Source of the DNA: Octopus bimaculoides
Taxonomy: Eukaryota
DNA length: 64,000 nucleotides
Direction of reading: 5' to 3'
Assembly (NCBI RefSeq): GCF_001194135.2
Contig: NC_068999.1
Span: 965,412 to 1,029,411, forward strand
Made by a program: the position numbers and the translations under genes. The notes under the pieces are model-generated. The model had not been told where the DNA came from, searched no databases, and saw only the letters and a program-made list of their open reading frames with translations. The stretch's first letter is position 1, and each line of letters starts with the position of its first letter. This document shows positions 5,570 through 11,087 of this stretch, piece by piece.

Positions 5570-7376
5570 TACAAACCCTGTGTATGTCCGTATATTTGTA
5601 ATTATATATGCGTCTACTAATACAGTATATCATACTATATAACTCCAGCACCAACGCCATTTTCCAAGTGATGCAGTAATTACAGTAAATGATAATTCGT
5701 CATGTTATAATTATGACAAGTCTTAACTCAGTAAGAACACAAATCAAACAATACTTGCTTAATTGACAGCTAATTATAACACTGGCAATATATTCTAATG
5801 GAAGGTTACTTAAACTTTGCTGCTACGGCTTCATATAAGTGAATAACGATTGACAACCAAATCACTGTTGTTACGGTGATGCCCGGTTTACTCTCATTAA
5901 GGAATTTTGTTTCTCAGGAGTTCTGAGTTCGCTTTCCATGTGCTTGAGGAATTGTAAAGTTTCACAACTTAAGCAAGACCTGAATGATCAGCGATATCTA
6001 CCTAGAATGAAATCTATCTTCAACAAATCTGAGGGTTAATTGGGAACCATTCTGACAAGGAGTTATACTGGGATGAGTTTTAAGTGACTCGGATTGCTCA
6101 AAATACATTATATGTTTTCTGGACGAAGGAACCCGTTGTTTGTTCTACTAGAAAGACAAATGTACCATTTGATTAGGAAGGTCTTCAAATCCTGAGATTT
6201 CTCTATCAGAGACCACCTTGCATGTGTATGAAAACAAAAGTGGAAGACATTTTTAACGTGAACAAACGATTATTTCTGTCTAGTAACATCTTGCAAACGA
6301 TTCGAGTAGCATTTTTCTATGCGACGAAAGATCTCTATATCCAGAACTTGTAAGAGCTAAGAGCCAGCGTATTTATAGGTACAAGGAGAGGTGTGTGTGT
6401 ATTTGCTTGTCTGCAGCTCATTCCACTGAAGTATTTTATAAAGGTCCACATTCATTCATATTCTTCCGAGGCCTGCCTATTTTCCCTGTGAAACGAACTG
6501 ATCGTGTTACAGTATGGAACGATGAATGAAAAAAACAAACATGTCTGCCTGTCATTTTATATTAATAGGACATTCAAACTTCTCCTAATTATGTCGTCTT
6601 AAAACACTTCTCTCTCAAATTCAGGTTGATATTCCACAGACGAAAGAGGACACTAACCATGCATAATTAAAATAATTATCTGTTAGCTCCATTGATTATA
6701 TTTATTACTTTTCGTTTCATATCACACTAGATGCATCCAAATTAAAATATACACTTCTACCAGATTGCAGAAAAGTGTTTTAATATTATTAGCCAGAATT
6801 TTCCAGAAAATTGCTTTCGTTGTTTAAATAGTAAAATACAATTTGGTACTTTTAGCTTTCATTTTAGATTTTTCTTTTTCTCACTATTACATTTATAAAA
6901 TGTAGTTGCCGCAGTTCAGAGTTTGGCTGCCAAAAGACATTTGCTGGTTTACATTCTAATTTAACACATTTCCAAAATAACGATTTCGTTAAACGTTAGC
7001 ATCTTTCATCGTTTCATCGTGATGAATAAAAAATTTTAATCAAGAAAGAATAAACGATGTTAACGAAAGAAGTCGTACCAAAAATGTGTTGACCAAACGC
7101 AACACTGTGGTTTGTGTGAGTGAAAAGGCAAACAGATACTCTTGCGCTAACAGGACGATTCCATGGCACAGTCAGCGTTTATTATTGAAATAATGAGCAA
7201 AGGAACCGCAAGAGAAAGGAGAAGGGGATTCTCGCGCAGGAAAAAAAAATATAAAAGAATTTGTTTAAGGGTTTCAAAATGCACTGGTGTCTCAAAACGT
7301 GGAGCCGTTTTTTAATTCTGTCATAGATTTATTCAAATGCCAATCCGGTTTCGAAAATGTCTTGCTTGTCAAAGAT

Positions 7377-7433
7377 AATAAATAAATAAATAAATACATA
7401 AATAAATAAATAAATAAATAAATACATAAATAA
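7377..7433. repeat. (AAAT)n tetranucleotide repeat with two ACAT interruptions
   Basis: Direct reading. Confidence 0.9.
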
Positions 7434-8860
7434 AGGAGTTCGGAGACTTTAAATCCAGAAGGTAAGTTTCAGAAACGATCAGATTTTCACAGAAATTTCA
7501 ATGAGTTTCTCAAGGATTGACAGTAATATGAGTGAAAATGTTTAATGATGATCATAAACAAACAGACATCATTGAAAGTTTAGCCATATTGAGTTTTTAT
7601 TTTTTTTTAATGGTGAAGACAAAGAACAAGGATGGGCGGAAAGAAAATGATGATTCTTTTTTTTTAATTTTACGGTGGAAGCGAATCCGGAATCGTATTC
7701 TTGGGAAGCAAACCTCTTGTCACACACCGACGACCAAAACCTTTATGAGAAACGTCATAACATTTATGTATATTTGAGAATATATTGCTAACAATCCCGT
7801 CTATTGCTGGTGCAACAGCGAAAGATTGTTTAGTAAATCCCAATATACATATGCATATATATATATATATATGCATGTATATACACACACACGTATCTAT
7901 GCATGTATGTATGTATGAATAAATCTGCAATGTTTCAAAGCACGTTTGTGGATTTAGTAAAACTCAATATCGAATCCAGCTTTACCAGAGATATCAACAT
8001 TGATAGAATTATTAGAAATTTTGCAGAGAAAAATTCCAGAGAATCATCCATTATATTATCTGATTAGCTTCATCGATGCCTCGTATGCAACACGGATGTA
8101 TTTGTTCATTCTGGTCCACAATGAGAAACGAAAAAAAGGAAAAACATTTACAAAAATATCTCAATGGTCATATTTTGTTATCCTGAGTTTAGTTATCGTG
8201 TTTAATTATAATTGAACATGATGGCTAATCTCATGATAACTCAACATGACCATCCATACATTCATAGTTCAGGGCTTTCATAATCAGACACCAAAAGAGG
8301 TCTTCTCTGTTTATAATTCTTTATAGTCATATTTTTGTTTTCGGAAACGGACAGACATCCTGCGATGTTAGAATCTCATCTCATGCAATTGTTTTTATTA
8401 CAATAAATAAATACAAATGAAACACTAAATATTTCATACGCAATTACGTTCTTCAAATCATAAATTATCAAAATATTTTTTACACTTCCTCCGATGTGCA
8501 AAAGTCGTCTTGTTTCAACTTCAGAATTTAACTTCGGCTATTCCTTTCCATATATGTAGTCAGCTCCATTATTCTCTGTGTATGGCTTCATGAAGTCTAT
8601 GAAGGAATACCTTACTTTTTAAGATCTAAATTTACTCAATCTGCGACTTTTAAGAGAAACTACTCACAGACAGACACTTATACACAAACACACACGCATG
8701 TTTAAAGTATATTCCGGTAGTAACGTAGAAGAGTAAAAATAGAGCTAGTTCACCCTTAGAATTACCAAATAGCCGGCAGTATTACCGTATACTTCCAAGT
8801 TTAGGCTTAGGCATTCATCGGGTGTTAAAATAAAATTGAATAAAATAGAGTCAGCAAGAA

Positions 8861-9250
8861 GTGATATATAATTACTGTCCCCGTTAATAACTCTTTGACT
8901 TCGACGCTAATGCATCCTACTGGCTTGTTTGAATCTAGTGGATGCGGGTAATCCCAATTCCGTTCGCTGTCAATGTGCTTTCAATGTTGACAAGAAATTA
9001 TCCGAATTTTCTTTTATTCAAGTTTTAGGCAGACGATAGCTTTCGAAGCTAATCTATCGTCTGCCAATTCTTTAGTCAAATCACTTGATCCATGCACTCT
9101 TAACAAAGGAAGCCTCTCGTGTCAACATTGAAGGCACGCTGACAGCGAGCGGAATGGAAATACCAGCGTCTATTAGATATAAACGAGCTAGTTGGATGTG
9201 TTAACATCGAAGTCAAATATTTACTAATGAGGACGGCGATTGTATATCAC
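8861..9250. repeat. Long imperfect inverted repeat: arms 8861-8991 and 9121-9250, with an inner perfect 12-bp stem at 9028-9039/9054-9065
   Basis: Manual alignment of the left arm to the reverse complement of the right arm gives 102/130 Watson-Crick pairs, 28 substitutions (22 transitions) and one 1-nt bulge. Inner stem ggcagacgatag/ctatcgtctgcc. Confidence 0.93.
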
Positions 9251-9419
9251 ATGAGGAGATACATCTGGATCCCATTATACAGGTAAACCATTGCTTAATT
9301 TAAATCCTGTGTATATGTGGATTTATGTTGTATCGAAACATGTGTAGTGTTTATGAAATAGCTGTCTAATCGTACTCCTTCTTGTTGATTCTATTTCATT
9401 CAATTATATATACATGTGT

Positions 9420-9686
9420 GTTCGTGCGTATGTGTGTGTGTGTGTGCGTGTGTATGTGTATGTCTTTGCGTTAGAGTTTGTGCCCTACCACCACTTGACA
9501 ACTAGTGTTGGCGTGTTTTCATCCACGTAACCTCGAGGTTCGTAAAATAAACCGATAGCATGAGTACCAGAGTCTCAAAATAGGCAAACATATTACTGGG
9601 ATCGATTTATTCGGCTATAACTCTTCAATGCGGCTCCCTAGCATGGTTTCAGCCTAATAACGCAAATGGGTAAAACAAAAAAGATA
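9420..9686 (+). mobile_element. Family C SINE, 3' half after a (GT)n tract
   Basis: (GT)n followed by ctaccaccacttgacaactagtgttggcgtgtt..gtaacctcgaggttcgtaaaataaaccgatagcatgagtaccag..tactgggatcgatttattcggc..gcggctccctagcatgg. The first part matches 3335-3365. Confidence 0.75.
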
Positions 9687-11087
9687 TATGTCTACTCACA
9701 CACACACGAGAACCCAGAGTGTATTTATTCCAGTTACTCTGTATCCTGATGATATTTCAACAACTTCTCTATACGTATGTATTTACTTTGACTCTTCCCC
9801 AGGAATAAATATCAAACGAAGTTCTTGTAGCTATCCTCTATGGAAGTTCAGAGAACGTGTTGCTATGTAACTGTTGACAGTATATCAATAAACTTCAACA
9901 CTGTGTACGGACACATTTACAGACCACCTCACTTTGTCTTATATAAATAGACGGTGCTAAATTCATGCGCTACTTATTCAATCTCTACCACATTTTCCCG
10001 AGAGTTGCGTTGTTTGGAACTACAGTTCGTCCGCATCGATTTACTGGTCGATGCGTTTCCGACGGCGAAATGGCCAATCGTGAATTGTGGAAGTGTGAAG
10101 GGACTTGCCGCAGAATAAATATAAACGTAAAATTTCCCTTTCAAAACATCGTTTTCCTTATGGCCTCGCTGGCGTTTACAATACCATTCGCCTGTAAATG
10201 TTGGTATACATTTATGCGCATTCATACATATGTACATACACACGTGCACACACATATACACATGTGTGTATGTTTATGCATACATGTTGTTCTGGAGCGA
10301 AAGAAATACATTGAAACTGACAACAATTAGTTGTGTATTCAAAACCTGCCATCCAGTAATTAATTTGTTTCATTAAGGATTTGTTTAATTTGTTATTTTA
10401 AGACCAGAAGGTAGAACCATATTGAGTTTCGAACTGAGAAATTCTGTTCAATGAAGGAAACGTTACTCAATGAAAGAAATGCCAGTCAATGAAAGAACAA
10501 AGTAAGTTACTTATAATAGTAAGCATTTTTGCTGTGGTTGTCAACTTTTCAAGTTACCAAATTTCGAGTTACCAAGATTAGCGTTTATAGGGCCATCGGG
10601 ACAGGAAGGAATAATACAGACATTGCCTTCTGTTTAGAAAGCGAGCTAAAACACTCGGAATAAAGTGGTTTAAGGATAAATGCATCTAACCAATGTGTTC
10701 GAACTCAAGCGAAGGATATGTAGCACAAGTAAAGTGGACTGGTTCTCTGGAGGTTTCATGCGCATCTCGTTTTTGCTGCAAGTCCTGCTTCTAAGTGTTT
10801 TTAGTCGAAGCTACCAACCTCAATAGCAACAAATCAGATGTTAGGCAAATTGGTCTTACCAGTTGTACCTCATGAACTCTACAGTGCATTTCCGTTTTAC
10901 AGTAAATGACAGTCGCCAGGGAAACGTTTTAATAACACAGATGAAATGAAAGTGAAATCGAAACGACATACACTGATGCGCACCTAAGCATTTCAAAGTT
11001 TGGCACTTATGTCAGCATTCTCCGTTTGTGGCAGCAAAGATGCTTGAAACCATCACAGATACCATTTCTGCCAACAACTTTTAAATT

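What the first reader, a model, noticed from the sequence alone, without database searches (positions are those of the whole stretch)
8861..9250. 390-nt rod-like imperfect hairpin with kept register, G.U-biased mismatches and a perfect apical stem
Seen: a 130-bp outer stem (8861-8991/9121-9250) with 102 Watson-Crick pairs, 28 substitutions and only one 1-nt indel. 22 of the 28 substitutions are transitions. Read as a + strand RNA, 15 become G.U wobbles and 7 become A.C mismatches (117/130 paired). The 15:7 bias has a one-sided binomial p of about 0.07, so it is suggestive only. The ~129-nt interior holds a flawless 12-bp stem (ggcagacgatag/ctatcgtctgcc) capped by an AGCTT-TCG-AAGCT mini-hairpin. 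The sequence is unique in the window, not low complexity, and shows no target-site duplication. Inference: either an aged fold-back/MITE, or a structure under selection as RNA, such as a Drosophila-style hairpin RNA feeding endo-siRNAs or an ADAR duplex (A.C mismatches are preferred editing sites). This is the strongest candidate for an undescribed functional element here.
Basis: partly seen in the sequence, partly recalled or inferred. Interest (0 to 1): 0.75.

Follow-up and report, generated by a model that had tools for sequence, protein, structure and literature searches.

The report
Decayed inverted transposon copies, not RNA gene
The 390-base hairpin is real, but its two arms are old, decaying copies of a dispersed mobile-element repeat lying head to head, with no sign of transcription or of selection on the fold, so it is an ordinary feature of a repeat-rich genome.

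Summary
Arms 8861-8995 and 9117-9250 pair with 105 Watson-Crick pairs, 29 mismatches (22 transitions) and 1 indel. The + strand has 15 G.U and 7 A.C, MFE -190 kcal/mol, z = -19.9. A perfect 12-bp stem sits in the loop.

The functional reading does not hold.
- **Larger repeat:** the inverted repeat runs further out (8830-8861 pairs with 9409-9378). The right side carries a 127-nt segment that the left side lacks.
- **Dispersed family:** the flanks and the outer arm parts belong to a family of roughly 100 or more copies, found in the source organism and three relatives. Other copies carry the arm sequence next to the same neighbours. Only the inner ~230 nt is single-copy.
- **Decay, not selection:** 11 of the 29 mismatches are places where one arm still matches the family majority. 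Transitions are enriched at CpG. The G.U excess is not significant (two-sided p = 0.13).
- **No compensation:** the orthologous hairpins in three related species differ almost only by one-sided, pair-breaking changes. The stems diverge at least as fast as the flank.
- **No RNA:** no read in three RNA-seq runs, and no RNA contig covers this copy.
- **Literature:** no endo-siRNA pathway has been found in molluscs.

Verdict: an aged fold-back or inverted pair of transposable-element copies. Low interest.

The parts
8660..8704 (.). CA-rich microsatellite on the outer left edge; mirrors the TG-rich tract at 9413-9470
   Evidence: Sequence. Weak inverted match 8662-8698 / 9471-9435, 78%. Very high read depth typical of a simple repeat.
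8705..8861 (.). Outer module A of the repeat family (multi-copy); its last 32 nt (8830-8861) are the inverted partner of 9378-9409
   Evidence: 97-200 contigs per run lie here at >=80% likeness, at depth 10-100x single copy. In other copies it continues outward as GTGTATTCCGTTAGGAACGTATTAGAGTAC, and inward after 8861 into the reverse complement of 9348-9377 (loose ends).
8861..8995 (.). Left arm of the hairpin: an inverted copy of 9117-9250. Relative to the family it lacks the 127-nt segment that should lie between 8861 and 8862.
   Evidence: 77.8% over 135; the family sequence preceding 9252 matches the reverse complement of 8861-8889 at 26/29; other copies continue after 8861 into the reverse complement of 9251-9377.
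8996..9116 (.). Spacer or 'loop', single-copy at >=80% likeness. Its right part (about 9090-9116) still resembles another family copy, so the right copy probably runs into it.
   Evidence: Depth equals one contig in all runs. Another family copy (X17 record 8) continues past the 8992 equivalent as TGAGACGTCGTCTTCGTTAAGAGAGCAGAG. That is 20/30 identical, in register, to the reverse complement of 9090-9119, against 9/30 to 8993-9022 (my alignment).
9028..9065 (.). 38-nt palindrome: a perfect 12-bp stem plus a small apical hairpin. It sits 10 nt off the symmetry centre of the big arms.
   Evidence: one occurrence, none in shuffles. In organisms B, C and D only 9045 G>T differs, in its loop.
9117..9250 (.). 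Right arm of the hairpin; part of a family copy in + orientation
   Evidence: Depth rises from 1x at 9117 to 10-40x at 9250. Other contigs span 9140-9386 and 9185-9384. The family-majority letters at 9173, 9179, 9180, 9189, 9204, 9218, 9228, 9230, 9235, 9238 and 9242 restore Watson-Crick pairs with the left arm.
9251..9377 (.). 127-nt family segment present only on the right side; the most abundant part of the family
   Evidence: 250-350 contigs per run, at depth about 100-170x single copy in the source organism. About 37x single-copy raw-read depth at >=90% likeness.
9378..9412 (.). Inverted partner of 8830-8861. Family homology ends at 9412 in this copy.
   Evidence: In other copies it is followed either by (TA)n or heterogeneous sequence (11-20 contigs per run) or by the reverse complement of about 8800-8830 (5-7 contigs per run).
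9413..9470 (.). TG-rich microsatellite on the outer right edge
   Evidence: Sequence; depth above 17,000.

Best explanation
The hairpin is a by-product of mobile DNA. Two copies of the same part of a dispersed, non-coding repeat family lie head to head. Typical members read, on one strand, 8705-8861 + 9190-9377 + 9378-9412, often followed by an inverted copy of the first module. That makes it a MITE-like or fold-back-like element with long inverted ends.

The right copy (from 9090 or earlier to 9412, + orientation) is followed directly by a TG microsatellite. The left copy (8705-8995, opposite orientation) has lost the 127-nt segment 9251-9377. The most likely origin is a single fold-back (inverted) duplication of one family copy. 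In that model the spacer is the continuation of the original right copy. Two independent insertions followed by a deletion is the alternative.

The arms have since drifted apart to 78% identity by ordinary DNA mutation, much of it CpG deamination. That drift produces the transition-rich pattern that reads as G.U/A.C 'mismatches'. Nothing indicates that the fold is used as RNA.

Shown: family membership, decay without compensation, and absence from the RNA data examined. Inferred: the fold-back origin, the class of the element and the age.
For: **1. Multi-copy family**
- At >=80% likeness, hundreds of contigs from the source organism (X1, X2, X3) and from related organisms B, C and D lie on 8734-8860 and 9140-9412.
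- Depth is 10-170x the single-copy level. Only 8879-9110 is single-copy.
- Raw DNA reads give about 1x on the left arm and loop, and 5-12x on 9186-9262.

**2. The arm sequence is part of the family**
- 25-32 contigs per run continue upstream of 9252 as TACTAACGGAGACAGCAATTATATATCACC. This is 23/30 identical to the right arm and 26/29 to the reverse complement of the left arm.
- After 8861 the family continues into the reverse complement of 9348-9377.
- Contigs join 8736-8844 to 9384 and downward on the opposite strand, with up to 109 nt on the shorter side.
- RNA contigs from other copies read 8736-8833 + 71 nt + 9238-9369 on one strand.

**3. Mismatches look like decay**
- At 11 of 29 mismatches the family majority equals the complement of the left-arm base. 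At 9224 and 9237 it equals the right arm.
- Transitions hit 8 of 24 CpG-context sites against 14 of 108 others (OR 3.4, p = 0.03).
- The G.U:A.C ratio of 15:7 has a two-sided p of 0.13.

**4. Orthologues**
- Organism B has 23 listed differences and C has 17. Almost all are one-sided and break or wobble a pair.
- Watson-Crick pairs number 105 in A, 98 in B and 104 in C.
- The only pair changed on both sides (8993/9119) is a mismatch in the window.
- A-B divergence is 7.8% in the stems against 5.1% in the left flank.

**5. RNA**
- No read on 8850-9262 in three RNA-seq runs (about 5.5 Gb read) at >=80% likeness.
- None on 8905-9165 at >=90%.
- RNA-run contigs hold 0.00 of the hairpin's words. Those that touch the flanks are other copies, all below 90% alike.

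**6. Other searches**
- No Rfam family reached E <= 1 on the hairpin (8861-9250) itself; the nine sub-threshold hits of that search lie in the flanks. No tRNA.
Against: - The inner 230 nt, including half of each arm, was not found in other copies at >=80% likeness, apart from one contig in organism B. Family membership of the innermost arm parts therefore rests on continuity and that single contig.
- Family termini and target-site duplications were not determined, so the class of element is unproven.
- The loop is less diverged than the stems between A and B (2/121 against 21/268, p = 0.018). The difference is not significant for C, nor when events are counted once per branch.
- RNA sampling was about 6% of three libraries of unknown tissue. 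Low-level or tissue-specific transcription, and small RNAs, are not excluded.
- At CpG sites, polarising changes by the family majority can be misleading.
Confidence: 0.85

Rival explanations
1. A hairpin-RNA (hpRNA) gene: the inverted repeat is transcribed as one RNA, Dicer cuts the stem into 21-22-nt endo-siRNAs, and these silence a target.
For: A long, register-keeping stem with strong predicted stability. The locus is retained in three related organisms.
Against: - No RNA read or RNA contig from this copy.
- The stems decay without compensation and at least as fast as the flank.
- The arms are transposon copies.
- A survey of 32 molluscs, including Octopus bimaculoides, found no siRNA-type Dicer and no endo-siRNA population (PMC12479628).
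- Retention in relatives is expected for any neutral sequence at 4-6% divergence.
Confidence: 0.02
2. An ADAR substrate: when transcribed, the duplex is bound and edited A-to-I. In the strong version the A.C mismatches and the fold are kept by selection. In the weak version editing is incidental.
For: - Any transcribed inverted repeat of this length and identity is a plausible ADAR target.
- Most hyper-editing in animals lies in paired inverted repeats.
- O. bimaculoides has an unusually high fraction of loci that form long dsRNA, and very high hyper-editing (PMC5625713).
- Low RNA depth (0.1-0.9x) exists in unique sequence 600-1200 nt away.
Against: - No read over the hairpin even at 80% likeness, a threshold that would admit heavily edited reads.
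- No conservation of pairing.
- The A.C sites are explained by G>A or C>T DNA changes: 8887 and 9230 are G in the relatives.
- The incidental version would make this one of very many such loci, not a distinct element.
Confidence: 0.08
3. Two independent insertions of the family in opposite orientation close to each other, later trimmed by deletion, rather than one fold-back duplication.
For: - Each copy has a different lesion. The left lacks 9251-9377. The right lacks the equivalent of 8705-8830.
- Few changes are shared by both arms against the family majority: 9209, perhaps 9226.
- The region is dense in repeats.
Against: - The two copies break off at nearly the same family coordinate (8995 against 9090-9117), which is unlikely for independent events.
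- The right copy runs on into the spacer, as expected for a fold-back duplication.
- The mirrored CA/TG microsatellites lie outside both copies.
- This rival changes only the history, not the verdict that the hairpin is transposon-derived and neutral.
Confidence: 0.3

Closest known systems
Fold-back / palindromic MITE-type transposable elements (for example the palindromic ~200-bp Harbinger-derived repeat of Xenopus tropicalis described in PMC5625713; Drosophila FB and Galileo elements, from my own knowledge)
   Same: Non-coding, dispersed in many copies, with long inverted ends so that a single copy folds into a long imperfect hairpin. Copies differ by internal deletions with variable breakpoints.
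   Different: Termini and target-site duplications were not identified, and no autonomous partner or transposase was found. This particular copy carries an extra inverted duplication of internal sequence (8862-9189) that typical family members lack.
Inverted pairs of interspersed repeats, such as inverted Alu pairs in primates, the usual source of long dsRNA and of ADAR hyper-editing
   Same: Two diverged copies of the same repeat in opposite orientation within a few hundred bases give a long imperfect duplex if transcribed (PMC5625713).
   Different: No transcription or editing was detected here. The two copies break off at almost the same internal position, which suggests one duplication event rather than two insertions.
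Drosophila hairpin-RNA (hpRNA) loci that produce endo-siRNAs
   Same: A long inverted repeat with a short loop.
   Different: No transcript, no small-RNA evidence, and no constraint on pairing. The pathway is reported absent from molluscs (PMC12479628). The arms are transposon copies, not gene-derived sequence.

Membership tests
MITE / fold-back transposable element | Many dispersed copies in the genome | tested here: met
   97-351 contigs per run at >=80% likeness on 8700-8862 and 9251-9415, at depth 10-170x single copy, in four organisms. The inner 8879-9110 is single-copy.
MITE / fold-back transposable element | Terminal or long inverted repeats within one element | tested here: met
   In this copy: 8830-8995 against 9117-9409. 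In other copies: 8736-8844 is joined both to 9190-9238 onward on the same strand and to 9384 downward on the opposite strand. 9409-9412 is followed by the reverse complement of about 8800-8830 in 5-7 contigs per run.
MITE / fold-back transposable element | Common sharp termini flanked by target-site duplications | tested here: inconclusive
   Family homology continues at least 54 nt outward of 8736 and ends in or near microsatellites on both sides. No terminus or duplication could be read from the summaries available.
MITE / fold-back transposable element | No coding capacity | tested here: met
   No ORF of 90 aa or more overlaps 8600-9500. Ten of the longer ORFs elsewhere in the window have no Pfam match.
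hpRNA / endo-siRNA locus | Transcribed as a single hairpin RNA | tested here: not met
   No reads in three RNA-seq runs at >=80% likeness. 0.00 of the words in RNA-run contigs. Sampling was limited, about 6% of each run.
hpRNA / endo-siRNA locus | 21-22-nt small-RNA duplexes with 2-nt overhangs from both arms | not testable with these tools
   No miRNA or small-RNA run could be listed. Contig sets cannot hold reads shorter than 31 nt.
hpRNA / endo-siRNA locus | Host has a dedicated siRNA Dicer/Argonaute pathway | not tested
   Literature only: none found in 32 molluscs, including O. bimaculoides (PMC12479628). The identity of the source organism is coded here and was not verified.
Structured RNA under selection | Base pairs kept by compensatory changes; stems slower than neutral flank | tested here: not met
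   Between A and B, C, D nearly all changes are one-sided. At least 14 break or wobble a pair, against 2-3 that restore one. No pair is kept through a double change. Stems diverge 7.8% against flank 5.1%. Only three close relatives were available, so power is low.
ADAR hyper-editing substrate | Clusters of A-to-G differences in RNA reads relative to DNA | tested here: not met
   No RNA reads at all over 8850-9262.
Known RNA families (Rfam 15), including miRNA precursors | Match to a covariance model | tested here: not met
   No hit at E <= 1 inside 8861-9250.

The most novel reading that the evidence does not exclude
The hairpin, or the well-kept 38-nt perfect palindrome in its loop (9028-9065; one loop change across four organisms), is transcribed in a tissue or stage not sampled here. 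It would then serve as a long-dsRNA source, for example a dedicated ADAR sponge or editing-dependent regulator, or a precursor of non-canonical small RNAs in an animal thought to lack endo-siRNAs.
Probability: 0.04. Interest if true: 0.5.

Novelty: new member of a known kind. Interest (0 to 1): 0.1.

Why it matters
It matters mainly as a negative result. A striking, statistically extreme hairpin with a seemingly RNA-like G.U bias turns out to be what two decaying inverted transposon copies look like. In repeat-rich genomes such structures are common. PMC5625713 reports an exceptionally high density of long dsRNA-forming loci in octopus. Such hairpins should be screened against the genome's own repeat content and against orthologues before being proposed as RNA genes. 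If this locus were transcribed, it would at most add one more incidental ADAR substrate.

Tried and rejected
- **Rfam and tRNA.** Rfam scan of 8000-10200 at E <= 1 gave nothing on the hairpin. Sub-threshold miRNA-like hits fall on a different palindrome at 8155-8262. ARAGORN found no tRNA-like SINE head in 7000-11000.
- **Copies inside the window.** BLASTN with word size 7 found no second copy of the family in the 64 kb. Family evidence had to come from public runs.
- **Runs not available.** Searches for miRNA and for PacBio runs returned none. Small RNAs and long-read architecture could not be examined.
- **First read-laying run.** It failed on a filtered stretch.
- **An internal inverted repeat.** I suspected that 9165-9189 is a decayed copy of 8715-8745. 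The local alignment score was 22 against 18.3 +/- 3.1 for shuffles, which is not significant, so I dropped it.
- **Twin priming.** Twin priming of a LINE-like element was considered. Both copies include the same outer end, whereas twin priming inverts an upstream, non-overlapping part.
- **SINE or LINE 3' end.** A simple 5'-truncated SINE or LINE 3' end would explain the fall in depth towards the inside. It does not explain contigs that join 8736-8844 both to 9190 onward on the same strand and to 9384 downward on the opposite strand.
- **Pfam.** Ten of the longer ORFs of the window had no match, so no gene context or transposase was found.
- **Strand asymmetry of the fold.** The + strand folds at -190 and the - strand at -170 kcal/mol. 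This follows directly from the non-significant 15:7 count and adds nothing.

Full report
**Observation**

The hairpin is there as described. Aligning 8861-8995 with the reverse complement of 9117-9250 gives 105 matches, 29 mismatches (22 transitions, 7 transversions) and one 1-nt gap. On the + strand 15 transitions read as G.U and 7 as A.C.

The + strand RNA folds at -190.4 kcal/mol, against -88 +/- 5 for dinucleotide shuffles (z = -19.9). The - strand folds at -169.8. The loop holds a perfect 12-bp stem (9028-9039/9054-9065) that occurs once in the window. The small AGCTT-TCG-AAGCT hairpin overlaps that stem by two bases.

The structure is not an assembly artefact. A contig from another sample of the same organism covers 8560-9294 without a difference. 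Twelve DNA runs hold 82-94% of its words.

**The inverted repeat is larger than reported**

- 8830-8861 pairs with 9409-9378 (87.5% over 32 nt).
- Between this outer pair and the reported arms, the right side has 127 nt (9251-9377) with no counterpart on the left.
- Outside, a CA-rich tract (8660-8704) mirrors a TG-rich tract (9413-9470).
- So 8861 and 9250 are not element ends. The absence of a target-site duplication there is uninformative.

**The arms belong to a dispersed repeat family**

I laid contigs of public runs on 8560-9415 at >=80% likeness. Hundreds of contigs cover 8734-8860 and 9140-9412, in the source organism (coded A; runs X1-X3) and in three related organisms (B, C, D). Depth is 10-170 times the single-copy level. 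Only 8879-9110 is covered by one contig per run.

Raw DNA reads agree. They give about 1x on the left arm and loop, and 5-12x on 9186-9262. At >=90% likeness they give about 37x on 9253-9339.

The arm sequence itself is part of the family:
- 25-32 contigs per run continue upstream of 9252 as TACTAACGGAGACAGCAATTATATATCACC. This matches the right arm at 23/30 and the reverse complement of the left arm at 26/29.
- Other copies continue after 8861 as GAGTACGGTTGGACAGTTATTTTTTAATCA, the reverse complement of 9348-9377. The left copy has therefore simply lost the 127-nt segment.

**Family architecture**

- RNA-run contigs from other copies read 8736-8833, then 71 nt, then 9238-9369, all on one strand.
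- DNA contigs join 8813-8833 to 9190-9222 on the same strand. They also join 8816-8851 to 9378-9395 on the opposite strand, with up to 109 nt on the shorter side.
- After 9409-9412, some copies go on into the reverse complement of about 8800-8830.

A typical member is therefore module A (8705-8861), a centre (9190-9377), the 35-nt inverted partner of A's inner end, and often more of A inverted. It is a non-coding element with long inverted ends, MITE-like or fold-back-like. Typical members lack 8862-9189. A few copies reach 9140. One copy in organism B covers the equivalents of 8908-8992 and then continues with sequence 20/30 identical, in register, to the reverse complement of 9090-9119. That continuation is only 9/30 identical to 8993-9022. 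So the right copy runs on into the 'loop', while the left copy stops at 8995.

**The mismatches are decay**

- At 11 of the 29 mismatched pairs (right-arm positions 9173, 9179, 9180, 9189, 9204, 9218, 9228, 9230, 9235, 9238, 9242) the family-majority letter is the complement of the left-arm base.
- At 9224 and 9237 it equals the right arm.
- Transitions fall on 8 of 24 CpG-context sites against 14 of 108 other sites (odds ratio 3.4, p = 0.03). This is the signature of methyl-CpG deamination in DNA.
- At such sites the majority rule can mislead about which arm changed. In either case one arm keeps CpG and the other has TpG or CpA.
- The 15:7 G.U excess has a two-sided p of 0.13. It only reflects how many C>T and A>G changes, against G>A and T>C changes, fell on the + strand.

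**Orthologues**

Single-copy contigs of organisms B (8852-9262, 25 differences), C (8858-9262, 19) and D (8906-9070, 6) carry the same hairpin. I placed the listed differences on the pairing scheme.

- Almost all are one-sided.
- At least 14 break a pair or turn it into a wobble. Two or three restore one.
- The only pair changed on both sides (8993/9119) is T-A in B and C, but an A.G mismatch in the window.
- Watson-Crick pairs number 105 (A), 98 (B) and 104 (C).
- A-B divergence is 7.8% in the stems, 5.1% in the left flank and 1.7% in the loop.
- The loop-stem difference is nominally significant for B (p = 0.018). It is not significant for C. By my hand tally it is also not significant when events are counted once per branch (22/268 against 4/121); no test was run on that tally. 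The stems hold more CpG.
- There is no sign that pairing is protected.

**Transcription**

- Three RNA-seq runs of organism A (about 5.5 Gb read, about 6% of each) give no read on 8850-9262 at >=80% likeness. That threshold would admit heavily edited reads.
- They give none on 8905-9165 at >=90%.
- Contig sets of the older RNA runs listed hold none of the hairpin's words.
- The RNA contigs that touch the flanks are other family copies, all less than 90% alike, and none covers 8850-9168.
- Small-RNA runs could not be obtained.

**Context from the literature**

Organism names are coded here and I could not verify it.

- A survey of 32 molluscs, including O. bimaculoides, found no siRNA-type Dicer and no endo-siRNA population (PMC12479628).
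- Hyper-editing in animals lies mostly in paired inverted repeats. O. bimaculoides has an exceptionally high fraction of loci able to form long, nearly perfect dsRNA (PMC5625713).
- About two thirds of the O. vulgaris genome is repeats, with many unclassified SINE, TIR and MITE families (PMC13282606).
- A transposon-derived hairpin is thus an expected object in such a genome.

**How it arose (inference)**

The two copies break off at nearly the same family coordinate. The right copy continues into the spacer. The mirrored microsatellites lie outside both. This fits one fold-back (inverted) duplication of a single family copy together with its flank. Later the left copy lost 9251-9377, and the right copy lost the equivalent of 8705-8830.

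Two independent insertions trimmed by a deletion remain possible, at about 0.3. Few changes are shared by both arms against the family majority: 9209, perhaps 9226.

Arm-to-arm Jukes-Cantor distance is 0.255, about 0.13 per arm. That is four to five times the per-lineage A-B distance. With the calibration quoted in PMC13282606 (0.09 for about 25 My), this is roughly 35 My. The figure is a rough estimate.

**Verdict**

The functional-RNA reading is not. The object is a member of a well-known kind, a transposon-derived inverted repeat, and of low interest.

Remaining uncertainty concerns the class and termini of the family, the exact history of the duplication, and transcription in tissues that were not sampled.

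Noticed in passing
window 53542-54051: A 510-nt, non-low-complexity, almost perfect palindrome (508 of 510 positions self-complementary; 255-nt arms, no spacer), directly after a (TA)n tract. It is either a very recent inverted duplication or an assembly fold-back artefact.
   Followed up: partly
window 8155-8262: A 108-nt palindrome (58-nt arms, 78% complementary) with sub-threshold miRNA-like Rfam hits on both strands (MIR7504, 34.7 bits against a gathering score of 83). It is probably a small palindromic MITE.
   Followed up: no
window 9470-9707; short related stretches at 8533-8550 and 10035-10052: Another multi-copy repeat, at depth 14-22 per strand at >=90% likeness. It ends in an A-rich stretch plus (CA)n, which is SINE-like. 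Short direct matches nearby suggest further fragments of the same family.
   Followed up: no
window 7774-7947 and 9340-9513: TG/TA-rich simple repeats with very high DNA and RNA read depth (up to about 17,000x). Many reads join the two tracts, which is a mapping effect of microsatellites and not a real deletion.
   Followed up: no
window 8736-8783: The most abundant 48 nt of the left module. 7-15 contigs per run diverge after 8783 into a different sequence (CTTATGGTATGCTACCAA...). This piece seems to be shared by more than one repeat family.
   Followed up: partly
window about 31460-31540, from 60458, from 61865: Runs of N (assembly gaps) inside TA/CA microsatellites. The 'inverted repeats' reported there are artefacts of N and simple sequence.
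   Followed up: partly
window 9183-9225: A 35-40-nt stretch of the right arm is far more abundant at >=90% likeness than its neighbours. Short high-depth contigs cover it in organisms B and C. It marks the point (about 9190) where typical family members begin their central part.
   Followed up: partly
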